Positions 12,855 through 59,006 are shown, numbered from the stretch's first letter. The stretch: DNA of 64,000 nucleotides from Takakia lepidozioides (GCA_030704615.1 CM060731.1:5208001-5272000), one strand, 5' to 3'. Notes: generated by a model not told the origin, from the letters alone. A program made the numbers and translations.

Positions 12855-15713
12855 CTCCCACTCAGTATACTTTGTTAACTAGTGCACTGTCTGCCTCTCA
12901 TTACTCCCACTCGGGACACTACGTTAACCTGTATGTGCACCAAAGAGCGAAGCTTTATGAACTTGTCAGGAGCCAAAGCTTTTGTAAAAATGTTAGCCAA
13001 CTGATCATTTGTGCCGATGTAATGAATATCAATCTCCCCATTTTGGTGATGCTCACGGATAATATGATATTGGACATCTATGTGTTTTGTGCGCTTGTGG
13101 TATTCCGGATTATGCACAAAGCGAATGCATCCCTGGTTATCACTGTATAGGTACGTTGCTACTTCCTGCGGATAACCAATGCTGGTTAAAAGCCTTCGAG
13201 CCCACACAGTTTCCTTTGTTGTGTGACAGGCTGCTACATACTATCAGTTGTGGACCCTGCGGTACATTGATGTTTCCTGCTGCTCCACATAATAGGGCCA
13301 TTATTCAAGAAAAGCACACAACCACTACGTGATTTCCTGTCGTCTAAGTCACCAGCAAAGTCAGCGTCACATTAGGTAGTGATCTTTTGACCATCACCGC
13401 CACTGTAGCAGATAGAGAAGTCCTTAGTGCCTTTAAGGTACTTCATGATCCTGCGGACTGCAGTGCAGTGTATTCTTTTCAGGTTCTTCGAGAACTTGGA
13501 AACATAGCTGATAGCATAGTTCAAATCTGGTCGAGTTCCCAGCATGCAAAACATTATACTGCCAACAATTTCAGAGTAGGTAATAGACTCTGAGTGTTCA
13601 TCGTCATCTGCAGTATTGAGGCACAAGTGAACATTTGGGTCTGCAGGTGTGGAAACCGGATTTGCAGCATCAAAACCAAATTTCCTCAAGATCTTGGCAA
13701 TATAGTGAACTTGGTCAATGTAGAGTAGCCCGACATCTCGATTTCTGGTTATGTGGAGGCCAACATAACAATCTGCTGCACCACTCTTAGTTTCAAACAT
13801 TGTGTTTAGGTAGGCCACCATTGCATGAAGCGTATCCTGGCTAAGGCAACACCCGAGACCATCATCGACAAAAATGGTAATAATGATCTGAAGTTCCTTG
13901 CTCCTGAAAAACACGCATGGACCGGCTGTGCTTTGAACAAGTTCATATCGCCTCAGAAAGGCTGTAAACTTGTCATTCCAAACCCTTGAGGCTTGTTTTA
14001 GGCCGTATAGAATTTTTTAAGCCTGCACACCTTTCCTGGTTGACCTTCAACTTCGAAACCTTGAGGTTGAACCATGTAAATTTCCTCCGTCAATTCTCCA
14101 TACAAGAAAGCAGTTTTGACGTCAAATTGAATCATCTCCATATTTTCTCTGGCTGCGATGGCTAGCACTGTCCTTATAGAGTCATATTTCACGACAAGAG
14201 CAAAGGTTTCTTCGTAATCAAGACCATACTGCTGTGAATAGCCTTTCGCCACAAGCCTGGCCTTAAAACGCTCTACGATCCCAGCAGATGTAGTTTTTAC
14301 TTTATAAACCCATTTGTGGGAGATCCATCAGTTCCCACGTTTGGTTCTGAATCAGAGAATTGAACTCTTCTTGCATAGCCATTTGTCACTCATTCTTTTG
14401 CTTTGATTTGTTGGCTTCCACAAAAGATCGAGGCTCCTCAATCTCTGATCCAACTAGACATGCAAGAGATGGTCCTGTTCTGCTGCTTTCAGTATGATAA
14501 GCCCAGTCACCATACCTGACTGGCGGTTTTCTTGTTCGTGGAGGGAGGACCTCTTCAGTAGTATCAGGACAGGCACCATCAATGATATTAGGTCCTGCCA
14601 CATCAACAACAGGTCCTTGCATATCACCTGCGTCTGGTCCTTGCACATCATTAGCATTTGGTTCGACCTGAGATTCTTGTAAATCGTGAAATGCCGTTGT
14701 GCAATTAGCGGTTTCATTTGCCAAATATGGCCACTCCTCGTGAACAGAGACATCTAGATTCCCTTGAATCTGACCTTCATTCAGGGAAGATTGTCTTGCA
14801 GATAAGTCCTCGTTGAAAACAACATCCCGACTCACTACAACCTTTTTTCTCTGTTTGTCCCATAGACGATAGGCCTTGCTCTCATCACAATAGCCAAGAA
14901 ACATACATTTTCGACTTTTTGAATCAAGCTTGGCTCTGAGTTTCTTCGGAACATGAACAAAGGCATCATAGCCGAACACACGTAGATGTCCCACTGTGGG
15001 TTTCTCACCCTTCCACGCTTCAATGGGGGTTCTCCCTTTCAAACTTCTGCTTCTCGTTCGATTCAACACATAATCCGCTGTGTGTATAGCCTCAGCCCAA
15101 AAGATTGGACTAGTTCCACTATCATGGATCATGCTCTTTGCACTTTCTACAATAGTGCGGTTGTCTCTTTCCGAAACTCAGTTCTGTTCAGGGCTATAAG
15201 AAGCAGTTGTTTCATGATGAATACCCGCCTCTTCAAGGTACCTCTGAAAATCGCCGCTGAGATATTTGCCGCCTCTGTCACTCTGAATCCTCAAGATCTT
15301 ATTTCCTGTTTCCCTGAGAGTTAGATGTAACATCTTCTTGAAACAAGCCATCACCTCAGATTTTGCAGCTACACAATAAACCAGTCGAAACCCTGAGTAA
15401 TCATCTTTGAATAAGACATAATACATAGATCCTCCAAGTGACTGCTGCATTGGTCCACACACGTCCGTGTGGATTAGCTCTCCTGGTTTGGATACCTTGC
15501 TTCTTTCTGCATGGGTTGGAAACATCAGTCTCCGGTTCTTACCATGTGCACACCCTTCACAGAATGGCATATCAGACCCCTTATCCACAATCGTCAGTCC
15601 CTCAACCACTCATGTTGCTTCCATGTGTTTGATCATTGTTGAACTTACATGACCAAACCTCTGATGCCACAATTTCAGACTCTTCTTGGTTCCAAGCTCC
15701 CCGCTGACGGCAC
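12507..15713 (-). mobile_element. Ty1/copia LTR retrotransposon A (3' half: integrase, RT, RNase H, 3' LTR), degenerate
   Basis: LWHQRFGH, IHTDVCGPM, IQSDRGG, WAEAIHTADYVLNR, AKGYSQQYGLDYEETF, QFDVKTAFLYG, IFVDDG, SDNQG, HKRTKHIDV; PPT at about 12855-12864. Confidence 0.92.
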
Positions 15714-16026
15714 TGTTGAGTTTTGCTAATCAGTCTGCTTCCACTAGCTCTTAGATCACATACTAACCACAATCATGCAATGAAGTACACACAAGAAAGG
15801 AGTAACAAATGAATAAGCTTGAATTGTATTGAGCCAAAAGTATAATCTGTTGTACTATGCACACTCCGCTAACTGCATAAAGCTACATTGTATGAGAGTC
15901 ACCTACTGTCGCTATGGTTCACTGATCGATAAGCGAAGCAGCGGCAGTCATCGCCCTATATCTATTCTGAACTACTCAAAAGTGAAATAGCAAGAAATCT
16001 ACTGTCAAGAAACAAGAGGGCCGTTA
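15714..16026 (-). repeat. LTR of copia B (3' copy)
   Basis: Near-identical to 19518-19827 (about 7 substitutions and one 3-bp indel by eye). Confidence 0.9.
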
Positions 16027-17239
16027 AAGATCTCCGTTCAGAAACGCTGTCTTGATATCGAACTGGGCCATCTCCATGTCCACTGCTGCTGCTATTGCAA
16101 GGATTGTACGTAGGGAGTCATATTTGACCACAGGTGCGAAAGTTTCAGCATAGTCAATGCCTAATTGCTGGGAGTAGCCTTTGGCGACCAGCCTCAAACT
16201 CCTCATTCATTGCAACATTCCACTCTGGTATTCCTTCTGCCTCGGAGTAGTTTCTTGGCTCTTCAAACAGTTCTCCTGTTCTTGCAATATATGCATTCGA
16301 CCCTCCAACGCTTCCACTTCCTGGCTTCCACCATTCACCGTATCTGTTCAGTGGTTTCTTTTCTCTTTGTGAGCGCGCACGAAGTGTCGACTTCAATGTA
16401 TTTGCTTGAATCCCTTCTATGATCACTTCTTCTTCAGACAATTCAGGGGTTATTACAATGTCTGAAGCTGGTGTGATTATCTCTTCGATGACTTCTTGTT
16501 CGTGATTCTGAACCCTCTCATCCCTCCTGCCTCCGGGATCTAAGGGTAGCTGCAAATCTTCTCTATTAAGATTAGGCGGCACTGCTCCATCTCTTGTGGC
16601 TGTTACTTTTTCCGTTGCGCCCCTTCCTGGCTCCGGAACGAAGAAAAAAGGGCGCAACTTACAATTTATTCGCAATGCGAATGAAGTGGTTTTAGCCTGA
16701 GAAGATGCGTGGAAGGGAAAAAAAAAGCCTCCGCCGGATAGACGGGTGGCCAGATGGGTGCAAGTGGAAGCCTTTTTTATAGACGGCTTTAGAATATAAA
16801 TTGACAAAAGTCTAACTACTATCAGTAAATTGGGTATTACACCATACACTTGTAAATCAATCGGGGTCTTTCACCTCGCTATCTGTGCTCTCGCTCCGCG
16901 CCTTTGACTCAGTAAAACGAGTCGTGGTTCGATTCAATAAGTAAAACACGGATACCGTGTTCGAAGTATCCGTGTTCGAAGCTTCTGTTCGCGCATCGCT
17001 TCCCCGCGGCGGCACTCCCTTCCCCAGCACTCTTCTAGCCCTTGCTCAAGTCTCATGGCGTGAGCTCTAAAAGACCGCCCCCATGTAGGGCAAATGTGAA
17101 AAGGTTTGTCAATTATCACTTAGATGGTCGACGATCCATACTCCGGCGAGAAAGCACAAGACGTCATTAAAGGAAATAGGGTTTACGGCCTCATAATTCA
17201 CCACTATTGCGTCGCCTAAACAAACTACACATAGTTCGA

Positions 17240-17397
17240 GGGTTTCATGGAAAACTTGGCCCTCTTCTCTATTAAGATCAGGCAGCACCGCTCCATCTCT
17301 TGTGGCTGTTAGGGTTTCATGGAAAACTTGGCCCTCTTCTCTATTAAGATCAGGCAGCACCGCTCCATCTCTTGTGGCTGTTAGGGTTTCATGGAAA
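17240..17397. repeat. 72-bp in-frame tandem duplication inside copia B pol
   Basis: FHETLTATRDGAVLPDLNREEGQV occurs twice; a further partial copy lies at about 16558-16605, beyond an unrelated insert of about 630 bp. Confidence 0.85.
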
Positions 17398-19517
17398 AAC
17401 CCGTCACGACTAATCACGATCTTTCTCTTCGTTTGATTCCACAACCTATACGCCTTGCTCGTATCAGAGTATCCCACACACATTAGTTTCTCACTCTTTG
17501 CATCCAGTTTCGCAAAGCCTTGGGAATGTGCATGAACGCATCACATCCAAAAACCTTCAAGTGAGCCACACAAGGCTTCTTTCCATGTCACGCTTCATAT
17601 GTGGTTTTGTCACTCAAAGTCCGGGTTGCTCCTCTATTGAGTACATGAACTGCAGTATGAGTTGCCTCTGCCCAAAGTTCAAGCGCTACTCCTTGTGCAT
17701 GAAGCATGTTTCTCGCGCTCTCCACTATGGTTCTATTATCTCTCTCTGCAACTCCATTTTGTTCAGGTGAGTAGGGGGCAGTGATTTCGTGTTTGATTCC
17801 TGCATGTTGGAGATACTCACTGAGCTCCTTACTCATGTATTCTCCCCCTCTATCTGACCGTAATTTCTTGATCCTTCTCCCTGTGTCATTCACAACCATC
17901 TTCTCTAATTTCTGGAAACAGGAGAACACTTTAGATTTGTTCTTCACAAAGAACACAAACCTATAGCCGCTGTGGTCATCCTTAAAGAAGACAAAATATC
18001 TGGAACCTCGCACTGAATCTATGCTCATGGGGCCGCATACATCTGAATGGAAGAACTCTCCAGGTTTCGTTGCCTTTTCTTGATCTTGGTTAGCATGGAA
18101 AGGTAATCGGTGTTGTTTCCCATACTCACAACCTTCACAAAAAATCATCTCCTTAAGTATGAGGAGCACTTTTACCATTTGGCCCTTGTCCATCTTCTTT
18201 ATTGCCCCAAGATTTACGTGCCCCAAGCGGTGGTGCCAGATCTGCAGGCTACCATTTGCTCGTTCTTCTTTGATATCCCCAGTAGTAACCACATTTGCTT
18301 GTGACTGAGGTGACACAACTTCAATTTCCAAGCGGTAAAGTTTTCTCTCGCGTACCCCCACCATGACTGTTTTTTCTTCGTGATTTTGCATCTGACATCC
18401 TTGCTTTCCGTATGTAATAGAGATATTCTTATCGGCAGCCTGTCCAATCGAAAACAAGTTCGATGCCTGCAACCCAAAGTCGTCGATTGTCTGCAACATG
18501 ACTGCCCACTGTCCCTGTGGAATGGCCTTCAGATTCTTGAACCAGTCTTGTCTATCCGTCATATGCTCTGAAGCTCCACCGTCGGCTAACCAAACACTTT
18601 GATCTGCTCCCAATCCTGAGTCAGCCGAGAAAGCTTCACTCTCATTCGTCTCACTACTCGACGCAGTCTCACTTGCCGACACATTTTCTTGACTCGCATT
18701 ATTGCAGGGCTTATTCTTCTTGCATGCGCGCGACCAATGCCCTGTCTCCCCACATTTGTTACATCTCGTCCGCTTCTTAAGGGCGCTGATGTATTCTGCA
18801 TGGGATCTCTTTGTATACTCTTCTTTCTTCTTGCCTGCAGAGAAGAACGCTTGATCTGCATGTTCTTCCACGCCTCCCCTCACCTTGTCCAAGGTTTCCT
18901 CCTTTAGAAGCCTTGTCGTGAGAGTTTCGATCGTTTGCTTCTCTTCGGGTACATTATCCCAGGCAGCTATGATGTGCTTGTAGCTGGAAGGCAAGCTACA
19001 TATGACCTTGGTGATCACTGCAGAATCAGACGTATGCTCGCCCAAATCGTTGAGTTGCCTAGCCATCGCTTCAACTTTGCTTATGTGGCTCGCAATATCG
19101 TCACCTGCCTGCATCCTGTACTCAAAGAATTTTTGATGTAAAACATGTTTATTCTCAGATGCATTCTGTTCATGGATTGTGATCAACCGTGACCACATCT
19201 GATGGGATGTGTTGCAATTGCAAATGCTTTTCATCAACAACAGCACATATGAACATTTTAGCAGTGTTATTCTCTTCGTCCCACTGCTTCAAAGCCTCTT
19301 CTCCAACTACACTTGATCGCTCTACTGAACCATCTACAACTCCATAGATTTCTTTGGCCTCAAACACAATTTTCATTTGGAACTTCCATAGCTGGAAATT
19401 CTCCCCAGTGAACCTAGTAATGTGAGCCATGTCCTTGAGATCTCCTCCCCCCTTCATGTCGTGATACTAACTTTTCAATTGTGAAGATGAGGTATAGTGT
19501 GTGGTGGGCCCATAACC

Positions 19518-26643: not shown

Positions 26644-29600
26644 ATGACGAAGTCAGGTGCGGGACAATGGCTGCAGCAAGCTTTGCTGGACCTGTGTTCA
26701 GATGAAGAGTCAGGGCTGCAGCTTGATCCGGAAGTTATCAGCAGCTTAGTGTCTTACTGTGAGCTGGCACCACCTTCGGATGCCCAGGAGTATCTCCTGG
26801 TAAGTGGCCGTCATTCCAGTGCTCGCATTTCTCATCATATCACAAGGATTCTCATCTTCGGCCCAGCAGTAGGACTGGTGACAATACCAACCTGTATATC
26901 ATGTTTGAATTCTGGATACCTCTTGGAATGACCTGAACAATGACAATGAGATGAAATTAATTCGAAAGAGGTCTAATTTTCTGTCCTTTGCTCACTTCCG
27001 TTTGGATTGGTCATGCAACCGCAGCACAAGTTTGCCTGTAAATGAATGCGGAGGGCTGAAGCAGGGTGCTGGAATTGAACCATACGAATGTTCAATGCTT
27101 GGTCCGGGACTTTCGGAAGAATCCTAATTCCAGGCCAAAGAAAACGAGCTGCATGTTTAGTGTAAGAATTAGGGCTAGGTTGAGGGGTGTGTGGTACATT
27201 TCCACGAACATCATTGTAGATGGAAAAACATTCCACCCATAGTCTGTGTGACGGAGAGCCTAAGCTCACTGGTGGGAGTGTAGGGGTTCACTTGAAATAG
27301 GAGTCTGATGTAAATGGTCTGGATCTGGGAGTGTGATGCTTATCACCTGAAGGTAGAATTGCTTACAAAAGAGGAAAAACATTCAAAATGGTTCTGATTT
27401 TTGGAGGTGGCTTTTCACCTGCGTTGGTGCTCAAGCTGCACCATGGGTGACCCATTTTCTGGTTCTTAGTTCCCACTCTCTTTTCTTATGTTGAAGACCT
27501 TCCTGGAGGAACTCTTTAAGGCGACAGACACCTTGAAATACAAGATGGATATTGCGAGTGGAATGAGTTTGGTGATGGTGGTGGACCATGTCCGCACCTG
27601 TCACGTACCCCTGTAACTGGTCAGTCCAAACTGGGTACACGCCCATGTCCACAAGGCTATGGCTAGCAAAGTCCAATGAACACACTCCGGATCTCCTTTC
27701 ATCTTGGCACTATGTGGCAACTTACTTGTAAAACCCATTCAACGGGCTTCACAAATACCAGGGGTTGACAGCAGGGGTTGACAGCAGTAATTTTTGTTGA
27801 CTGGATGTCACCTTGTTTATTGCTGATCATTGTTTCTTGGCTTTTATAATGGGATCAGCTTGTTTATGTGTGACAGTTTGAAATGATATGCAGAACATTG
27901 TGGGAGATGAACGGTGCCAAGTCATTGTGTCTGAGTATCTGCAAAGAAGAGGAGAGGGCATGCCAGGCAGCATGCTCCCCCCGAGCAATCTTGCACAAGG
28001 GACCACTCAGAGTGGGGCAGGGATGCAAGCCTACATGAAGCCCCAGGAGGACGAGACTTGGTCTGTAGGCAGTAAGAGACTCCCCAAAACTGCAAGATCG
28101 AAACCTGGAATCCTAGATGGCCAAGGAAATGTAACAGCAAGTAGACAAGGTAAGCACAAAACTTGTGGCATTCTGTTGCCAAGTGTCCTGCAGTGGGAGC
28201 TGGATTGTGGACTGTTTGGATAAAATGGGTTATTGATTGTGTGGCTAATTGTTTGTAGCCAATGGAGCCCCTCCCACAAAAGCAGGGCCGTCTCAACCAG
28301 CCAAGATAGGCCGTACCAAAGGGCGGAAAGGTGGTAAAGGGATCTCATTGGCCGAGGCTGCTGAAGGCCTGGCTCTGTTTCCACGCGGCGGTCACTGCAG
28401 TTGCCAGGCTAGCAGACACAAACTGATTAACAACTGCCTTGGTTGTGGCAAGATCGTGTGTGAGCAAGAAGGGGAGGGGCCCTGTAATTTCTGTGGGGCT
28501 CTGGTGCTAAGGGAAGGGAGTGATTATGCGGGTCTTGAAGGAGTCAGTTTACCACCAGTCAATGAAGCCGAGGCAGCTGCCCAGGCCTTCAAGGACAGGC
28601 TGGTGGAGTATGATCGTTCCGCCACACAGCGAACCACTGTCATTGATGATCAGAGTGACTATTTCGAGATTGATGGAAATGCTTGGCTTTCGGAGAAGGT
28701 TGGATCTGGACTTGCTTTGTGACTTTCTGGGAGGTGTGGTTATTGTTCTCTGGAGTGTTGAGTGTTGTCATGTCTGGGGTGGATTGCCCAGTTACTTTGG
28801 GGGAACAGCCCTTGACCCTCTGCTTGTGGTGTGGACAGTGCACAGTTCCAGATGCTGGTGGTGGGCCATCACTGTCAGAGTCGTAGGGATAGGGTTTTGC
28901 TAAAAGCCAGGGGTTTATTGGAGGTGGTAGCTTCCTAGGCTTGTGATTTGAAAGATGAGCTTGTTTGGGACATTTATGAAGTTGAGGCATGTCTGTGAGC
29001 AATTGCCAGGGGAAAACTGGAGTCCTGATGTGCTTGGGCTCTTGGGGTTTATAGGAGAAACAACTGTTGCGGCAGCGGCAGGAGGAAGAAGATCGTGCTG
29101 AAGAGGAGAGACGGAAGCGTGTGATTGTCACCATTGACCTTCTTGGTCGTAAAGTATGCTATACATCACTTCTTTTATTTATGAGAATTCACTCACAGTG
29201 GTGGAACTTAGATAACAGACTATGCTGATATCTTACTGCATGAGCTCCTCTGAGGATGATGACTTGCCCTTAGTTGATAACATGAAGGCTGAACCCCACC
29301 GCTATGACTGCAACAACATGCTGATTCTGGCTGAGGAACGAAGGTGCTAACACTCTGTTGCAGAATATGGGGAGTCATATGCTTTTACCTGGAATGCCTG
29401 CAGCAGGTTCATGGTTGGGTGTGATGAACAGGTGGTGATGGCAGACACAGTAGCAGGCAATGAGGACACAAACAATGGGCACCTCATATTGGCAGGGAAC
29501 CCATTTGGAGAGAATGAGAGGGCCCCCAGTCTCCGCATCAAGCCTAACCCATTCCTCTCTGAAGTTCCGGTATTTGTGGAGACTAGAGGATCAGAATATA

Positions 29601-31963
29601 CTGGTATCAGGACAGACAAAGAAACAAAGAAACACCTGAGGGGTGCCATATTGAAGACAACAGGGAGGGTCCAGCATGATGACCCTGTAGTGGAGGCTGT
29701 TATTGGCCAGACATTTGGAGATCTTCAAATCCGGGGTGACAATGGAGAACCTGATAGCTGGCAAGGTCCAGTGAGGCAGATGCATGGCTCAACAGAGGAA
29801 GAAGATGAGGAATGTTTGCTTGATCGTCGGGCAATGCAAGGAAATAGTGAACGGGAACCATTTGACACAACAAGCTCAACCAGTAAAAAGAATAACAAAA
29901 GTAGAGAACGTCATGGGAGTGGTAGAGTATCCAGTAAGATTATGCCAGTAGTGGAGGCAGATTCTACTGTGGCTCCACCACCATTATTTGATATTTGTCA
30001 GCTTGAGACACAAATGCAGAAAGGGAAGGAAAAGCCCGTAGTCTTGGCGCCCTCCTTACTGGCTCAGAAACAGTCTGAACGGATGCATGCATCAACTGGG
30101 GCTCACCGCCAGTTGATGCCAGGGGTAATTTTGCTGAAGAAATGGCTGTCTATTGATGACCAGGTGCTTGTACTTTCCTTGAGGCTTTTCTTGACAATCA
30201 CTTCTGTACAATGTAATGTTAGTTAAGAAGATGATGCGTTTTCTGTGTTCTCCCTTTAGACGAGATAAAAGAAAAAGTCAAATTGAAGCCTCTGTAAATT
30301 CTCTCTCTCTCTCTCTCTCCCTTTCTTGCCGGGCAGCTCACCCACAGCAATTTGATGCTTGTGTGAAGGGCTTTCTAGACGATATCTGGAAAACCCGAGC
30401 TAATCGTCTTTGTCACACTACCAGGGTGAGCCCCTCACAAAGGTAGTTTCTGCTCCCTTTTGTTCCACCCAAACTGGGCACCAGTCTATGGCCACAAAGC
30501 TATGGCAATCAACATCTTATGAGTACATTCTCTCTCTCTCTCTCTCTCAAACTGGGAGCGGGGTCTATGGCCACAAAGCTACAGCAAACAATGTCTCATG
30601 AGTACATTCTCTCCCTCTCTCTGAAAACCTGGTGGGCTGAAACTTCACAACTGGCTTGGGGGTTAGTATCCTGCCGGGACCATGCCCATTATAGAGGGAA
30701 CAGTCAATGACATGATCTTTTTGTCATTGAACCACCACGAATAGCTTTGGAAGGGTTAATAGCCCATGAGATTCGGCCCTTAAGGGTAGTGGCATGATGG
30801 TTAATAAATACATCCTTCTCTTGCACACCCACATAGACAGTTGCTCATTTCAAACCTGCTACTTCACTATCACAGGTGGAAATTGTGAGAGAGTGCCGGA
30901 CGCTTGGCACTGGCCCTGGGGGTTTTTATCAGCCCATCTTCAGGGATGGCAGCCACATGCAATTGCAGATGATGTGCCTCGGTATCAAGCACTGGGAACC
31001 TACCACCAGTTCATATGAGCCTCAGCGAGTTAAATATGACAATGCAACACCGCCACCAATACCGTCTCATTTCGTAGCTATGGTGAGGATTGCACTTCAG
31101 AGAGCCCAGCAGTTGGCTCAAGGAGCTGGAGGCCGGCAGCCGGGTAGATCACAGGCTGACAGGTTGTTGCCAGGCATGAGCCCAACATTGTGTATTGTCA
31201 ATTTCTACGAACAAAGGGGCAGTCTTGGAATGCACCAGGTGGGATTTTCTGTCTCTTTTCTCCCCCTTTGTCCCTTTTTCTCCAAGGTTATTTTTTGTTC
31301 TAAGTTATCCCTTGGGCCTCCCGAAGCTATTATAAATTCCTTTCTGTCTCTTCGCTAGTTTAGTTTCTTGGAGCACATCCATATTGCTAGGTGCTGTAGG
31401 GAATGAGATTTACTTGCTATACTTTGATTGCTGTAGCCTCCCTCAGCCAACTTTGTCTGAATTCAGTAAGGGTTAAATGAGACTAAACTGGAGCAGCAGT
31501 GTCATGTGAAGTAAAGATAAAACTACCTTCCCTCATTGACTACAAGATCAGACCAAGCGTTAATGCTGAAGGCTGGATTACCAGTGGCCTGATCTGAGCT
31601 TTGTGTTCTTTTAAAATCTTCCTTGATGGCTGTCACACTCTATTCAAATAGAAGTGTTTCTCAATATCATCTATGTCATTCTCGCAGGACAAGGATGAAA
31701 GCCCTGAGAGCCTGCAGCGAGGGGCCCCTGTAGTGTCATTTTCGGTGGGCGATCATGCAGACTTCAGCTATGGGAAAGAAAGAGACATTGAGAAGGCTAG
31801 TAAGGTAACACTTGAATCAGGGGATGTCCTTGTCTTTGGTGGGCCAGCACGCATGCTATTTCATGGAGTGACACAAGTTCACACTCACACTGCTCCAAAG
31901 GAGCTAATAGAGAGGACAAGTTTGCGACCTGGTCGTCTGAACCTCACATTCAGAGAGCTTTGA
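26644..31963 (+). CDS. ASC-1/TRIP4-like zf-C2HC5 protein fused to a C-terminal AlkB-family 2OG-Fe(II) dioxygenase (about 773 aa)
   Basis: Exons 26644-26799, 27894-28149, 28259-28698, 29055-29153, 29432-30163, 30876-31238 and 31688-31963 total 2322 nt, in frame. zf-C2HC5: CSCQASRHKLINNCLGCGKIVCEQEGEGPCNFCG and RTTVIDDQSDYF. AlkB: CIVNFY, GMHQDKDE, LESGDVLVFGG, FHGV, RLNLTFR. Confidence 0.88.
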
Positions 31964-41125: not shown

Positions 41126-41810
41126 GTGATGGCATGTTTGGCAGCGGAACAGAGAACGTTTTTTCGGACGTCGGGCAGATTAGATAATGCCTTCAGATCA
41201 TTTGGTGAAGGGGGCCCGTTCATGCCTCGTAAAGCAGCCCCTGTGGAAAACAAGCTGCAATGCAGTCTAGAGGAGCCCTATAAGGGCTCAACCAGGAAGA
41301 TGAAAATCTCCATAAGTATCGCTGATGCAAGTGGTAAGACACTCCCCGTTGAGGAGATTTTGACAATTGAGGTGAAGCCTGGTTGGAAGAAGGGGACTAA
41401 GATCACGTTCCCAGAAGAAGGGAAAGAGCAGCCCAACATGGTGGCTGCAGACCTAGTCTTTGTCATTGATGAGAGGCAACACGAAGTGTACAAGCGCAAC
41501 GGTAATGACTTAATTGTGGTACAGAAGGTCTCCCTTGTTGAGACGCTCACAGGTTGTACAGTCTCGTTGAAGATGAGAGGACATTGGGAGATAGGTGGGA
41601 GGACATGGATAGATGGGAGGACACTGAACCTATCTTTCTTAGATGTCGTCTGTCCTGGATATGTAAAAGGTTGTACCTAAGGAGGGGATGCCGGTTGCGA
41701 AGGAGCCCAGCAGAAAAGACAATTTGAGGATAAAATTTGAGATTGAATTCCCGACCAGGCTGACTGCAGACCAGAAAACAGGCTTGAACTGTTGGGGGCT
41801 AGCTAAAACA
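41126..41810 (+). pseudogene. Class B DnaJ/Hsp40 C-terminal substrate-binding region, no J-domain, frameshifted
   Basis: RKAAPVENKLQCSLEE, EILTIEVKPGWKKGTKITF, ADLVFVIDE, then PKEGMP...NLRIKFEIEFPTRLT in another frame; no introns in the fragment. Confidence 0.85.
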
Positions 41811-53887: not shown

Positions 53888-56800
53888 TTACTCACATGAA
53901 AAGTCGTTGTCGACCTGCTTATCTTCGGGATCGTCATCATTTCGAATATGAATCCGATCAGTCTGTGTGCCTGAAGTGGAGCCAGACAAAAGGGGGAGGA
54001 GCACTGTGTTGTAGAGGTCAGAATCACCCTCCATACCAAAAAGGCTTCTTCCGCCTGCCTTGCATGCGTGGTAAGTTGCTCCTGCACCAGACAGGAGAAC
54101 ATAAGCAGTTTGGAGGAGGGGATTTAAGCAGATGAAACTGTTGAAAGGAAACCAATTCGGAAGGGAGAAAACGAACCTGTGGACACAGAAAGATCGACCA
54201 TCCGTGCAGAGGGGTGGCTGCATGACTCCAGCAGTATTTGCATGAATGCTGGTGACTTTTCCTTTGCACCTCTCCAGGGAGTGCCATCTGGTCTCTTCAG
54301 AGTCTGACTGGACTGCATGAAGTTGTACAAAATGTCATCGACATGGGGCTCATAGGGGGGGTTGACGAAACAACCCGGGTCAGAAATCTCAAAGCTGCGG
54401 ATGGAGGATGGTGTCTTTGATGTGCGAATCCTCCGCAGGCAGATCGCCTCGAACATCCTCGTCTGCCAAAGATAGCAGGTTAGTGTGGTAAACACAATCT
54501 AAAGTGGAAGTGTGTACATCGGCTATTCAGAACTCTGACACCAAAAAACCATGAATCGTTGATGATCGGTGTCGATCATAAAACATTCTACCAGAGTGGA
54601 GCTGCAGAGAAAATTGAAACTCATGATCAAAGCATAAGCAGAAGGCAGACGGCATACCAGCTGACCAGGGAAACCCCCTTTCACAAGGTAGAGGCTGTTC
54701 ACACAATTCCATGTGCGCAAAACTTCAAACCCTGAAGACTTGAGGTATGATGCCAATGCCCGACGACTATCATTGTCACATGACTGAAAAAGCAGAAGTG
54801 TCCCTGCATCAGAGAGGAAATTGTTACAGAACCCGAATACCCAACTCCAGTAGTTGTCCTCGAATTTGTTCCACCCTGGCGTCTTGCCCTTTGGAAGAAC
54901 TTCTGGCACAGCCTGGCCATCCGGGATGTCGAGAATGACAATGTCGGCCGCATAAGTTTTCTGCACACCGCACACGAAGGTGGGACCTGTGCTCACCTGC
55001 AACAGACATGTTTTTTATAAGAACGATGGCAAGAATGTTTTCTAAGAACGAGACTGAAATACTACCAACGAAACATTCAGAGAAAAAGGAAAGAAAGTGG
55101 AATTCTCACCAGATTGAGGAATGAGATTATATTGTCCCAGGTAGGGGATGGCACCCCAGTGTATCCTCTCTTTCGACTCTGCATCATCGAAAGCCAACCC
55201 TCATTAACAATTTTCATCTCTCCTGCTGAATCAGAACGGGAAGGGTGTGGCTTGGCATCGAACACGCACTGAAGAGTGCGGGTATATCTTCCAGCACTAA
55301 AGTCCTGCCCACTCTCCATCTCCTTTTCATTCTCCTTCCCCTTGTCCTTTTCTTTCTCTTTGGACTTGTCTTTGTCCTTTGGCTTTGCTGGTGAGATGGC
55401 TATGACATCAACAGCCTTGTCTTTTGGTTTGCGGCCCGCCTTCTTTCCCTTCTGCGGCGTTCCCTGAGCATCAGGCTCCTTGGCAGCCAAGGTTGCTATG
55501 TTTCGTTGATACTCTTCGTCAGTCAAAGGCGCCAGCATCTCAGCGTTATTGTTCAAGTATTTCATATGCTGTTCTTGAAAGGTCGTGTGCTCAGGTGGGC
55601 AGTCAAGGTACCACCCACAGTCTCTGAAGTGAGAAGGACTCCAGTCCTTCAATATCCCTGCAGTATACATGGTTGGATCGTTTGCAGGGTCCGACCACAT
55701 GTCAAGATAGTCGGGAATTCCGCTCAGGTGATTTCCTTCCATAAGCACATATTTCGTGTACCTGAAAAAAGGAGATGAATCCCAACCCACAAAAGCGCTC
55801 AGTGAGTAAGATGCAAGTAGAACAGAAAGAATAAAACATGGATTGAAATGGCTCTGACAACTGCTCCAAGGACCTTTCAGGACCACACTACTGCTCCAGA
55901 TATGAATGTCGTCAACGCCATTCAGAACATTCCATTCCATGACACTGTAAATACATCCTAATCCAGGTGAATGCAAATAAGCGATTAGAAATGACACAGA
56001 CATAGAAGTGAATGTCGTCAACGACATTCAAGAATGAAGCCAAATTATTACTGAAATGAAGCAAAATCACAGGATGGAAATAAAAAAATTGAGTAAGGAA
56101 CCATCCAAGAAAACTCAATGCACATTCATAACGAACCTATCACTGAGGACCTCACAACATCACTGTATATGAATGGCGTCAACGCCATTCACAAAAATAC
56201 AAAAAAGAAACCAATTACTTAGCTCCCCAATCCATGAAAATTGAATTTGTCGTTTTTGAATAATACAGACACAGCTGTGAATGTCGTCAACGACATTCAC
56301 TTTGGATTTCTTAAAACAGAGCTTATCAAGCCTCCATATTCATCGCAAGAGGAAAAAACAATGCAGAACAACTGAATGTCTGCATTGACATTCAGCAAAA
56401 TGAAGTGATCAACCCTCATTGTAACCTCTATGGACATTACAAAAATTTAAATAACCTTGAGGACCACACAACAACTCCGTATGTGAATGTCGTCAACGCC
56501 ATTCAAGGACATTATCAATTCTAATCAGGGACAATATAATTGCACCCTTAGATCCTAACCAGGTGAATTCATATACTCGCTTAAGAATGACTCAGACAAA
56601 GAAGTGAATGTCGTCAACGACATTCAATCTGGATCTAAGATTGCAATCCATATGAAGCCACAATTTTTCCCAAAAAAATAGTAGAGTTTCAAGTATGACA
56701 TTTCACCTGTACACAACTCGCATCATGGCCCACTCTCCTCCAACCTGACTGTCAAAGTCGTTGGACCGTAAAATGTTACCATCTTTGGAGAACTCCCGGA

Positions 56801-59006
56801 AAAAACAGTATCTCCAGGTGAGACCTCTCCACTTCCTTATGTATGCCTCCAATGACATTTGGGGAGGGGAAACAATCGCAATGTTCAGGTCCTTCAAAGT
56901 CTGATCCAGCACAATGACGGCGCGCTTTTCGAGCTGCAAATAGTATATTTGTCAGAATTGCAAAAAAGAAACACATCACATACTTGAAGAGAAGAAACAG
57001 CATGTTCGAATACACACCTGACTCCAAAATGTAGCCTTGTGGAGCCAGTTATCAAACACCAAATCACTGATTCCTTCCACCTTTGTGCCAGGCTGTATGG
57101 TGCTCTTTGGGAACTGATTCAAGTCCTTTCCTGTTTGATCTGAGTTCCATATCTCCAGCCACCTTATTTTTGTTTGTGGGTCGACCATCGATATGGCCAG
57201 CCGGTGCAATTTCTCCTGCTGCATCTCCGGATGCACATGCTTGTCATAGTGTGTTTTGATCTGCTGAAGGAACTCAGGACCAAGTCCAGGATCTACTATT
57301 CTAAGCTGCTTTCCGAAGGCTGACATCAATTTGGTTCTTCGCATCTCAAACTCCTTCTTTATTGCAGCTTCCACACCCTTTGATGTCCTTAGTTCCTCTG
57401 GTGTAGTGCGGTAATATTCGGATTTTCCCTTCTCAGCTGCCTCTGCCAGTTCTTGCTGCATTCATTCAAGTAGTGATTAGCTCCGAAGGGACTCTAAACA
57501 TGTATTCGAAAAGTAAACAGATTACAGACTCGGGCTTACCGCATACATGTACTCCAGAAACGCCTCTCGTGTCAAAGAATACCAAGTGCCTGCAGCTCTT
57601 TCTGTTTCGCACTTCTTGATGATATTGGGTGGTAGTACTGTCCGAAAATCATCCAGCTTCATCAGACCAATCCTCTGAATTCGGAATAGTGTGTGAACCA
57701 AGCTTGTTGTCACATGCGATTTCTCTGTCGATCTGCAAAAACATTGAAAACATTGCATTCCTTAACACTGTTTTTTGAGGATCAACAAGACACTACAGAG
57801 GGAATCAAATCTCCTGGATGACTTACTTGTTCACGTCGTGCATAGCTGTAAGAAGCCTAGCGATGTCGTTTCCTGGATCCAAAACCATTGCCTCCACAGC
57901 AACATGCTTGTCTTTGTCTTTCGAATGGTGTTTCTGAATGTATCCCATCCATGCCAGCAATCGGTGGTTGCCGTCCCAGACGTAGAACATGTGGTTGCAA
58001 AATTGCTGGGTGTTCTTTCCCATCATGAGGCCCAGCTCGAACTCCTCATTGGCATCTTTCCAGCACTCATCCCAGTTATCACTGATCTCTGGAGAAACTA
58101 ATGTGCTTTTCCCATTTATATCCGTCAGTGACACATAAAAAACTTGTGCACCAAGTCTATATCCATGCACAAAATCACTCTCCAATTTTGTTATGTCATG
58201 GGAAAGAGGTGGACGCACAACAGGCATTGATATCATCCGGCACAGAGGTATGTCCAGACGCCCTCCAGATACGAGCATGTCCCTTATAACCTCCTGAGAG
58301 TTTACCTTCTGGAATGACATGAGTTCTTTCACCTTGTCAAGGTAGTGCACTTCGGATTCATCTGCTTCATCTGTATTCTCTGAGCTTTTTGCGGACTCGT
58401 CCCCATCTCCAGATCCTTTCCCCTCTGATCCTGTAGGCTTCGACCTCACAGTTTTCTGCACGATGCCAGTCAGTTCTGACTAAGTGATTTGCAAATAGTG
58501 AATGGCGGTAACGACAATCACTCTGTATTAAGGAAACTCACCATGAATGGTGTGAAAGAATTCAGCACAATCTACACATGCAAAGCCGAGACTGCCGTAT
58601 TCAAAACAAAAGTGAGAGCGATAGCGAACGGCGTTAATGACAATCACAAAAGATAACAACCTGCCGGATCGGTGTTGTGTAATGACATATATGTGCAACT
58701 GATTGACGGCAACGACATTCAGTGTAGTTTAGGGAGAATAGTAAGTGCAGACTCTCTCTTCAAACACATAGGTACATAAATCTCATGAGCAGAATCGAAT
58801 GGCGTTAACGACGCTCGCGATTCAGTAGTTCCTGCTAAAGAATGGAAGAGGAAGGACTCCTTGAAAGGCAATCACACAGACTATATGATAAAACTTACTG
58901 GCACCTTCTTAGGTTTTGAAATTTGATCCCCTTCTGCAGCTTTCCTCTTCCCTCTCACATCTGCTGGAGTTTCTGTCTGCGCAAGGGTTTCTTGACCTTC
59001 TTCCAT
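53888..59006 (-). CDS. ParB/Sulfiredoxin-domain protein fused to a beta-class N4/N6 amino-DNA-methyltransferase-like domain (about 1020-1030 aa, 9 exons)
   Basis: Exons 58899-59006, 57827-58479 (alternative acceptor 58455), 57540-57732, 57018-57455, 56707-56933, 55110-55761, 54658-54996, 54177-54462 and 53888-54081; all GT-AG, phase-consistent, no stops (3090 nt). ParB-like: VVRPP...KLESDF...FYVWDGNHRLLAW. MTase: ADIVILDIPDG (motif IV-like), then EKSPAFMQILLESCSHPSARMVDLSVSTGATYHACKAGGRSLFGMEGD (motifs X-I-II). Confidence 0.8.
55903..56626. repeat. Seven spaced 22-bp palindromes TGAATGTCG-TCAA-CGACATTCA in intron 5 of the ParB-MTase gene
   Basis: Copies start at 55903, 56009, 56170, 56278, 56373, 56484 and 56605. 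Confidence 0.9.
58499..58817. repeat. Four degenerate copies of the same palindrome in intron 1
   Basis: TGAATGGCGGTAACGACAATCA (58499), CGAACGGCGTTAATGACAATCA (58625), TGATTGACGGCAACGACATTCA (58701), CGAATGGCGTTAACGACGCTCG (58796). Confidence 0.7.

What the first reader, a model, noticed from the sequence alone, without database searches (positions are those of the whole stretch)
26644..31963. ASC-1/TRIP4 zinc-finger protein fused to an AlkB dioxygenase
Seen: one uninterrupted exon (29432-30163) links the ASC-1-like C-terminus (RIKPNPFL, TGRVQHDD) to the start of the AlkB domain (LMPGVILLKKWLSIDDQ), so the fusion does not depend on a guessed splice. HxD...H and RxxxxxR are intact. Known: human ASC-1/TRIP4 belongs to the ASCC complex, which works with ALKBH3 in alkylation repair and in ribosome quality control; to my knowledge angiosperms encode these two protein types separately. 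Inference: a Rosetta-stone fusion coupling ASCC/RQT recruitment to nucleic-acid demethylation.
Basis: partly seen in the sequence, partly recalled or inferred. Interest (0 to 1): 0.72.

Follow-up and report, generated by a model that had tools for sequence, protein, structure and literature searches.

The report
Moss TRIP4–AlkB fusion gene, conserved
This is a real seven-exon moss gene that joins the helicase-docking zinc-finger protein TRIP4/RQT4 to an AlkB nucleic-acid demethylase, but the same fusion is already catalogued, uncharacterised, from green algae to conifers, so this copy is an ordinary member of an old family.

Summary
A 7-exon, all GT-AG gene on the + strand (26644-31963, 773 codons) encodes a C2HC5 zinc finger and the TRIP4 third domain. 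A 244-codon open exon (29432-30163) follows, then a complete AlkB dioxygenase with all catalytic residues.

That one exon carries both the C-terminal motifs of plant ASC-1-like proteins and the N-terminal motifs of the AlkB clade. The fusion therefore does not depend on a guessed splice.

It is not unique. The same three-domain architecture occurs in predicted proteins or cDNA contigs of mosses, liverworts, ferns, a lycophyte, conifers, zygnematophytes and chlorophytes. Probable prasinophyte proteins also keep ASCH. Spliced cDNA contigs from a related moss and a Psilotum transcript carry the fused reading frame.

Trees of each half follow the species tree. Angiosperm ALKBH1D-like proteins are sister to the AlkB half of the gymnosperm fusions, so the split state in angiosperms is secondary. 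The closest solved structure is rice OsALKBH1 (5XEG).

One Ginkgo family survey mentions the zinc finger in passing. I found no paper that interprets the fusion.

Inferred, untested mechanism: the TRIP4 module docks on an ASCC3/Slh1-type helicase and a disordered tether presents AlkB to the unwound strand.

No reads could be laid on this locus. The scan had noted this only on this same stretch.

The parts
26644..26799 (+). Exon 1 (52 codons): start codon and N-terminal helical, PWI-like domain of TRIP4/RQT4-type proteins
   Evidence: 56-76% identity to the N-termini of fused and unfused plant homologues. The residues 1-73 of the Ceratodon orthologue that cover this exon (its match is residues 1-52) fold as a confident helical bundle, pLDDT about 90. 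The donor is GTAAGT.
27894..28149 (+). Exon 2 (256 nt): weakly conserved spacer, predicted disordered in the orthologue
   Evidence: tblastn matches of 33-49% to homologues. Orthologue residues 75-158 have pLDDT below 50. Splice sites are AG/GT and the exon ends in phase 1.
28259..28698 (+). Exon 3: C2HC5 zinc finger (eight ligands, 28396-28494) and the first part of the TRIP4 third domain (about 28582-28698)
   Evidence: Pfam zf-C2HC5 5.9e-12. It aligns to human ASC-1 8alz_A residues 159-213 and 267-304, and to yeast RQT4 7zpq residues 135-220 and 326-355. Identity to Ceratodon is 83-92%.
29055..29153 (+). Exon 4 (33 codons): rest of the TRIP4 third domain (charged helix)
   Evidence: Pfam TRIP4_3rd profile positions 22-52. 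88% identity to mosses and contiguous with the exon 3 and exon 5 matches in homologues.
29432..30163 (+). Exon 5 (244 codons): the bridging exon. Codons 1-133 (29432-29830) form the ASC-1-like C-terminal region, with the RIKPNPF motif at 29534-29554 and the GRVQHDDP motif at 29660-29698. Codons 134-185 (29831-29986) are a variable Ser/Lys-rich tether. Codons 186-244 (29987-30163) are the conserved N-terminal extension and start of the AlkB domain.
   Evidence: Open frame. Unfused seed-plant and Selaginella ASC-1-like proteins end at about codon 128-133. Angiosperm ALKBH1D-like proteins begin to align at codon 166-186. The orthologue model is disordered over the equivalent of codons 1-160.
30876..31238 (+). 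Exon 6 (121 codons): AlkB domain with nucleotide-recognition region, NxY (31200-31208) and the His of HxD (31233-31235)
   Evidence: Pfam 2OG-FeII_Oxy_2 1.8e-12. 69-71% identity to mosses. The acceptor and donor are confirmed by collinear moss cDNA L001.
31688..31963 (+). Exon 7 (91 codons plus stop): AlkB core with the Asp of HxD (31688-31690), second His (31862-31864), RxxxxxR (31934-31954) and TGA stop
   Evidence: Pfam 2.2e-24. 5xeg OsALKBH1 at 7.8e-32 and E. coli AlkB at 4e-7, with aligned catalytic columns.

Best explanation
Shown: this is the intact moss orthologue of an ancient green-lineage gene. In it the TRIP4/ASC-1/RQT4 scaffold (PWI-like N-domain, C2HC5 zinc finger, third domain, but no ASCH) is joined by a disordered linker of about 160 residues, carrying short conserved motifs, to a catalytically complete AlkB-proper dioxygenase. 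That dioxygenase belongs to the OsALKBH1/AtALKBH1D clade. Inferred: the zinc finger and third domain dock the protein on the plant ASCC3/Slh1-type helicase, as they do in human ASC-1 and yeast Rqt4. The helicase exposes single-stranded RNA or DNA at collided ribosomes or at blocked transcription or replication. The tethered AlkB domain then removes N-methyl groups (m1A/m3C-type lesions, possibly 6mA) by Fe(II)/2-oxoglutarate oxidation. On this reading the plant achieves in one polypeptide the helicase-dealkylase coupling that humans achieve with ASCC3 plus ALKBH3. In the database hits listed here, the fusion is the only TRIP4 homologue of bryophytes and ferns. My odds: real fused gene and orthology about 0.9; helicase docking about 0.5; repair rather than epigenetic role about 0.4.
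For: Gene model and domains. The single bridging exon holds motifs of both halves. Fused spliced mRNA exists in relatives. Three moss cDNA contigs, L001-L003, carry one ORF with all three domains and are collinear with the window's exons. A Psilotum Trinity transcript, P0007, does the same. Logan contigs of 2.1-3.1 kb encode 640-730 aa fusions. The architecture spans Viridiplantae. Both half-trees follow the species tree, and angiosperm ALKBH1D-like proteins are sister (SH-aLRT 99) to the gymnosperm fused AlkB. With the Sphagnum TRIP4 part as query, every bryophyte and fern hit is fused. The retained TRIP4 segments align to human ASC-1 159-213 and 267-304 and to yeast RQT4 135-220 and 326-355. 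These overlap the two Rqt4 pieces, 171-219 and 323-381, that were docked on Slh1 (PMC9938168). The AlkB half matches OsALKBH1 with TM 0.94-0.95 and 50% identity, and E. coli AlkB with TM 0.86-0.89; the catalytic columns align. Human ASCC3 couples to ALKBH3, and TRIP4 binds the same helicase (PMC11214414).
Against: No binding or enzymatic data exist for any fused member. The angiosperm relatives are reported as DNA 6mA demethylases (OsALKBH1, PMC8118384; AtALKBH1D, Li et al. 2024 as cited). AtALKBH1D localises partly to chloroplasts (PMC3265494), which does not obviously fit a ribosome- or helicase-coupled role. In humans TRIP4 competes with ALKBH3 for ASCC3 and is not critical for alkylation responses. 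The absence of unfused TRIP4 in bryophytes rests on a 120-row listing and a length window of 359-1143 aa.
Confidence: 0.6

Rival explanations
1. The protein is chiefly a DNA N6-methyladenine demethylase with an epigenetic role, like its angiosperm relatives OsALKBH1 and AtALKBH1D. On this reading the TRIP4 part serves as a transcription-coactivator or chromatin-targeting module, not as a ribosome-quality-control or repair adaptor.
For: The closest solved structure is OsALKBH1, at 1.6e-71 and TM 0.95. Rice knock-outs raise 6mA two- to three-fold (PMC8118384). AtALKBH1D is reported as a 6mA demethylase (cited). Iyer et al. proposed TRIP4/ASC-1 as a possible reader of adenine methylation in transcription (PMC4738411).
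Against: That proposal rests on the ASCH domain, which is absent here. The active-site string is identical to that of the E. coli repair enzyme AlkB. The conserved TRIP4 segments are the helicase-contacting ones.
Confidence: 0.25
2. The locus mainly yields two separate products. An internal promoter, or polyadenylation in exon 5 or intron 5, gives an ASC-1-like protein and an AlkB-only protein, and the full fusion is a minor isoform.
For: The break point of the seed-plant split proteins lies inside exon 5, in a variable stretch at codons 134-185. Some databases hold AlkB-only or TRIP4-only models for a fern and for Ginkgo: P0012 and P0015. No reads were available for this locus.
Against: The frame stays open through the whole of exon 5, with no stop for an ASC-1-only product. 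Assembled cDNAs of a related moss and of ferns span the junction in one ORF. P0015 stops exactly at the exon 5 end equivalent, as a truncated gene model would.
Confidence: 0.1
3. The fusion is an artefact, or the gene is dead: two neighbouring genes or a decaying pseudogene read together.
For: None beyond the lack of expression data for this locus.
Against: There are seven open exons with canonical splice sites and intact catalytic and zinc ligands. Exon-by-exon collinearity holds with more than 20 homologues. Identity to other mosses is 69-92% in the domains.
Confidence: 0.03

Closest known systems
Fused orthologues in other green plants, for example Ceratodon purpureus M758_10G151100, Sphagnum fallax BDL97_15G031200, Marchantia polymorpha AXG93_857s1170, Ginkgo GbALKBH1B
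   Same: They share the domain order PWI-like, C2HC5 finger, TRIP4 third domain, motif-bearing linker, AlkB. The exons are collinear. Identity to mosses is 83-92% in the finger exon and about 70% in AlkB.
   Different: The linker is only 41-46% identical even among mosses. All are annotated only as hypothetical or Fe2OG dioxygenase proteins. None has been studied as a fusion. The Marchantia preprint names an MpALKBH1D, which I did not link to this accession, and none of the terms C2HC5, TRIP4 or zinc finger occurs in its text. The Ginkgo paper lists the finger domain without comment.
Rice OsALKBH1 (PDB 5XEG/5XOI) and Arabidopsis AtALKBH1D (At5g01780)
   Same: They are relatives of the C-terminal half: 50-51% identity and TM 0.94-0.95 for the moss orthologue model, the same catalytic residues, and the same conserved N-terminal extension (FDIC ... 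PSLL motifs) in the angiosperm ALKBH1D-like proteins aligned. The angiosperm ALKBH1D-like clade is sister to the gymnosperm fused AlkB. OsALKBH1 and AtALKBH1D themselves were not in that tree.
   Different: They stand alone, without the TRIP4 part. They are reported as DNA 6mA demethylases, and AtALKBH1D is partly chloroplastic.
Human TRIP4/ASC-1 (PDB 8ALZ, with ASCC3) and yeast Rqt4 (PDB 7ZPQ, RQT complex on the ribosome)
   Same: They are homologous to the N-terminal half: all eight zinc ligands and the third-domain motif align. These are the segments seen on the helicase in the yeast structure.
   Different: Human TRIP4 ends in an ASCH domain and neither protein has an AlkB domain. Here ASCH is undetectable and AlkB takes the C-terminal position. 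Some algal relatives have both, in the order finger, third domain, ASCH, AlkB.
Human ASCC3-ALKBH3 alkylation-repair coupling
   Same: It works alike in principle: an AlkB-family dealkylase is brought to a Ski2-like helicase that supplies single strands (papers cited).
   Different: In humans this is a non-covalent partnership, and TRIP4 competes with ALKBH3 for ASCC3. The plant enzyme is not ALKBH3-type (TM 0.61-0.68 to ALKBH3 against 0.95 to OsALKBH1). No interaction data exist for plants.

Membership tests
AlkB-proper subfamily of Fe(II)/2-oxoglutarate dioxygenases (Pfam PF13532) | Profile match above the curated threshold | tested here: met
   Exon 6 scores 48.3 bits and exon 7 scores 87.2 bits against a cut-off of 31.2. 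Together they cover profile positions 17-194, and positions 1-16 fall in exon 5.
AlkB-proper subfamily of Fe(II)/2-oxoglutarate dioxygenases (Pfam PF13532) | Iron triad HxD...H, and the 2-oxoglutarate ligands RxxxxxR and NxY | tested here: met
   All are present. The H and D are split by intron 6. The columns align with OsALKBH1 and E. coli AlkB.
AlkB-proper subfamily of Fe(II)/2-oxoglutarate dioxygenases (Pfam PF13532) | Double-stranded beta-helix fold closer to AlkB than to ALKBH1, ALKBH2 or ALKBH3 | tested here: met
   Tested on the Ceratodon orthologue model, not on the window's joined protein. pLDDT is above 90 over the domain. TM is 0.95 to OsALKBH1, 0.86-0.89 to E. coli AlkB, 0.37-0.49 to ALKBH1 and 0.6-0.69 to ALKBH2/3.
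AlkB-proper subfamily of Fe(II)/2-oxoglutarate dioxygenases (Pfam PF13532) | Oxidative demethylase activity and substrate range | not testable with these tools
   This needs an enzyme assay.
TRIP4 / ASC-1 / RQT4 | C2HC5 zinc finger with eight ligands | tested here: met
   PF06221 scores 45.8 bits against a cut-off of 25.8. All Cys/His columns align with human ASC-1 and yeast RQT4.
TRIP4 / ASC-1 / RQT4 | TRIP4 third domain (PF23134) | tested here: met
   The domain is split by intron 3. The two pieces score 26.5 and 27.5 bits, each just under the 27.7 cut-off, and cover profile positions 1-17 and 22-52. Unsplit orthologues score 61-73 bits.
TRIP4 / ASC-1 / RQT4 | C-terminal ASCH domain (present in human TRIP4) | tested here: not met
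   No ASCH hit at E below 0.1 in any exon, nor in the streptophyte and chlorophyte proteins scanned here. Only the algal proteins of about 1000 aa keep it. Plant ASC-1-like proteins also lack it.
TRIP4 / ASC-1 / RQT4 | Binding to the ASCC3/Slh1 helicase | not testable with these tools
   Only an inference: the helicase-contacting segments of Rqt4 are the conserved ones.
ALKBH3 (partner of the human ASCC complex) | ALKBH2/3-type catalytic domain | tested here: not met
   ALKBH3 structures match at TM 0.61-0.68 and 16-17% identity, well below AlkB and OsALKBH1. ALKBH3 does not appear in the PDB sequence search.

The most novel reading that the evidence does not exclude
In bryophytes and ferns the only TRIP4/RQT4 orthologue carries the AlkB domain, so their ASCC/RQT helicase complex would have a built-in nucleic-acid dealkylase. 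The angiosperm '6mA demethylases' ALKBH1D/OsALKBH1 would be fission products of this gene. They may still act with ASC-1-like and ASCC3 on single-stranded RNA or DNA rather than as free epigenetic erasers.
Probability: 0.35. Interest if true: 0.65.

Novelty: new member of a known kind. Interest (0 to 1): 0.42.

Why it matters
The gene itself is an ordinary orthologue. Its value lies in what the family says. Plant enzymes currently treated as DNA 6mA erasers (OsALKBH1, AtALKBH1D) descend from, and in most green lineages still are, the C-terminal domain of the TRIP4/RQT4 adaptor of the ASCC3/Slh1 helicase. That is a textbook Rosetta-stone link. It predicts a physical or functional partnership between ALKBH1D, ASC-1-like and ASCC3 in flowering plants. 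It also offers tractable bryophyte models (Physcomitrium, Marchantia) for testing whether helicase-coupled dealkylation serves ribosome quality control, alkylation repair or adenine demethylation. This bears on the disputed role of 6mA in eukaryotic DNA. I found no paper in the searched library that makes this connection.

Tried and rejected
- **Candidate extra exon.** I considered an exon at 29219-29344 with an alternative acceptor at 29404. I rejected it because in every homologue the exon 4 match is directly contiguous with the exon 5 match starting at 29432.
- **Joined protein.** Exons were searched one by one by reference. The full-length Ceratodon orthologue P0039 served as proxy for the fold and for the PDB sequence search.
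- **ASCH remnant in the linker.** No Pfam hit, and the orthologue model is disordered there.
- **Same-species transcripts.** The third word search, with exon 5, looked for same-species transcript fragments. The best hits were only 41-42% identical.
- **Literature.** Searches for an explicit description of the fusion found one passing remark on Ginkgo.
- **Neighbours.** Upstream there is only a Copia element and downstream a DnaJ gene, with no functional link.
- **ParB-methyltransferase gene.** Another reader noted such a gene at 53.9-59.0 kb. Six long minus-strand ORFs there gave no Pfam hit, so I neither confirmed nor pursued it.
Full report
**Observation**

The + strand between 26644 and 31963 holds seven exons that are open in frame and bounded by canonical GT and AG sites. 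They are 26644-26799, 27894-28149, 28259-28698, 29055-29153, 29432-30163, 30876-31238 and 31688-31963. Together they make 2322 nt, which is 773 codons plus a stop, and an in-frame stop lies just upstream of the ATG.

Pfam scans of the exons by reference gave these results:
- zf-C2HC5 in exon 3.
- The TRIP4 third domain split over exons 3 and 4.
- 2OG-FeII_Oxy_2 in exons 6 and 7. Only profile positions 1-16 are missing from those two exons, and they fall at the end of exon 5.

The ORF around exon 5 is open for 271 codons. The iron triad HxD...H, the RxxxxxR pair and NxY are all present, and the H and D are separated by intron 6.

Each exon was searched by reference, and a full-length orthologue was used where a whole protein was needed.

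**Is the bridging exon truly both halves?**

Yes. In an alignment of exon 5 with homologous segments (coordinates):
- Unfused ASC-1-like proteins of Selaginella, Ginkgo and angiosperms share the RIKPNPF and GRVQHDDP motifs. They then terminate at about exon 5 codon 128-133.
- Angiosperm ALKBH1D-like proteins begin to align at codon 166-186, with a conserved FDIC ... PSLL ... LLK.WLS stretch that runs into the AlkB domain.
- Codons 134-185 are a variable tether.

So one exon carries the end of one protein type and the start of the other.

**Expression**

A word search with exon 5 found no same-species fragment. Indirect RNA evidence from relatives is good:
- Three Logan contigs of about 2.1 kb, from three runs (L001-L003), carry one uninterrupted ORF with all three domains.
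- L001 aligns collinearly with the window's exons 1, 3, 4, 5 and 6. The breaks fall at the splice sites inferred here. These are therefore spliced moss mRNAs.
- A Psilotum Trinity transcript (P0007) and several fern-like Logan contigs of 2.3-3.1 kb encode the same fusion.

**Distribution**

A HMMER search of 1.84 billion representatives with exon 5 returned 15 hits. Four were full-length proteins of 671-762 aa, from Riccia, Calypogeia, Psilotum and Diphasiastrum. Three carry all three domains, and the Calypogeia model P0006 scored only the third domain and AlkB.

A word search with the Psilotum protein showed the same architecture in many other taxa:

| Group | Taxa with the fusion |
|---|---|
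| Ferns | Ceratopteris |
| Liverworts | Marchantia, Riccia fluitans |
| Mosses | Sphagnum, Ceratodon |
| Conifers | Taxus, Cryptomeria |
| Zygnematophytes | Mesotaenium, Closterium |
| Chlorophytes | Edaphochlamys, Volvox, Astrephomene |

Metagenomic proteins of about 1000 aa have the order finger, third domain, ASCH, AlkB. One sits on a compact, apparently intron-poor contig next to an SF-assemblin gene, which suggests a prasinophyte-like alga.

Angiosperms have separate ASC-1-like proteins (about 400 aa, no ASCH) and ALKBH1D-like proteins (about 380-480 aa).

By exon identity the window is a moss that is not in the database. It is 83-92% identical to Ceratodon in the finger exon.

**Evolution**

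Trees of the TRIP4 part and of the AlkB part both follow the species tree (quick IQ-TREE searches with SH-aLRT support, rooted on chlorophytes).
- In seed plants the TRIP4 tree shows two clades. One holds the fused gymnosperm genes on a long branch. The other holds the unfused ASC-1-like proteins of gymnosperms and angiosperms.
- In the AlkB tree the angiosperm ALKBH1D-like clade is sister to the gymnosperm fused clade (support 99).

The fusion is therefore ancestral. A duplication in the seed-plant lineage produced an unfused ASC-1-like copy, and in angiosperms the fused copy lost its TRIP4 part.

With the Sphagnum TRIP4 part as query, every bryophyte and fern hit was fused. This rests on a 120-row listing and on proteins of 359-1143 aa only.

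**What the halves are**

- *N-terminal half.* The finger exon aligns to human ASC-1 (8alz_A, 1.6e-25) at residues 159-213 and 267-304. It aligns to yeast RQT4 (7zpq) at residues 135-220 and 326-355. In the yeast RQT-ribosome structure, the Rqt4 pieces docked on the Slh1 helicase are 171-219 and 323-381 (PMC9938168).
- *C-terminal half.* The moss orthologue matches rice OsALKBH1 at 1.6e-71 and E. coli AlkB at 1.7e-15. It matches ALKBH1 only at 7e-9.
- *Fold.* An AlphaFold model of the Ceratodon orthologue has a confident N-terminal helical domain, a moderate-confidence finger and third-domain helices. Residues 313-473 are disordered, and the AlkB domain has pLDDT above 90. That domain superposes on OsALKBH1 at TM 0.94-0.95 and on E. 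coli AlkB at 0.86-0.89. It superposes on ALKBH1 at 0.37-0.49 and on ALKBH2/3 at 0.6-0.69.

**Literature**

- OsALKBH1 and AtALKBH1D are reported as DNA 6mA demethylases (PMC8118384; Li et al. 2024 as cited).
- AtALKBH1D localises to chloroplast and nucleus (PMC3265494).
- A Ginkgo family survey lists a zf-C2HC5 domain in GbALKBH1B without comment (PMC13296198).
- A Marchantia preprint names MpALKBH1D, and none of the terms C2HC5, TRIP4 or zinc finger occurs in its text.
- Human TRIP4 is reported to compete with ALKBH3 for ASCC3 (PMC11214414).
- No paper in the searched library interprets the fusion.

**Mechanism (inference)**

The conserved finger and third domain dock on the plant ASCC3/Slh1-type helicase. 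The flexible tether, with its conserved short motifs, lets the AlkB domain reach the single strand that the helicase exposes. There it removes N-methyl groups by oxidation. Whether the native substrate is damaged RNA or DNA (m1A, m3C) or 6mA is open. The active-site string is identical to that of the E. coli repair enzyme, while the angiosperm relatives are reported to act on 6mA.

**Verdict**

This is a regular member of an ancient, catalogued and functionally unexplored family.

Noticed in passing
window 14386-19246, minus strand: Copia-type LTR retrotransposon coding region (gag, zinc knuckle, integrase, retroviral SH3-like domain) about 7 kb upstream of the gene.
   Followed up: partly
window 41126-41680, plus strand: ORF with a DnaJ C-terminal domain (2.3e-23), probably one exon of a DnaJ/Hsp40 gene downstream.
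   Followed up: no
window 30300-30319 and 30529-30548 (intron 5): Two (TC)10 microsatellites about 230 bp apart. Each is flanked by similar sequence, suggesting a short duplicated segment inside the intron that separates the bridging exon from the AlkB exons.
   Followed up: partly
window 53888-59006: Another reader noted a ParB plus N6-adenine methyltransferase gene here, 22 kb from this AlkB-type gene. Six long minus-strand ORFs there gave no Pfam hit, so I could not confirm it. If it is real, the proximity of an adenine methylase and an adenine-demethylase relative deserves a synteny check in other mosses.
   Followed up: partly
L004:3105-6137 (ENA metagenome contig k119_45171) and proteins P0074, P0079, P0099, P0124: Proteins of about 1000 aa with finger, third domain, ASCH and AlkB in one chain. 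They lie on a compact contig with SF-assemblin and NTF2 genes. They are probably prasinophyte-like algae and represent the fullest, possibly ancestral, architecture.
   Followed up: partly
P0143 (Riccia fluitans R1flu_002774) versus P0037 (R1flu_002776): By locus-tag numbering, two gene models from the fused gene, Riccia fluitans has a second AlkB copy of the same clade. It is annotated together with a Ufd2P_core domain, so it is a likely local duplicate or a merged gene model.
   Followed up: no
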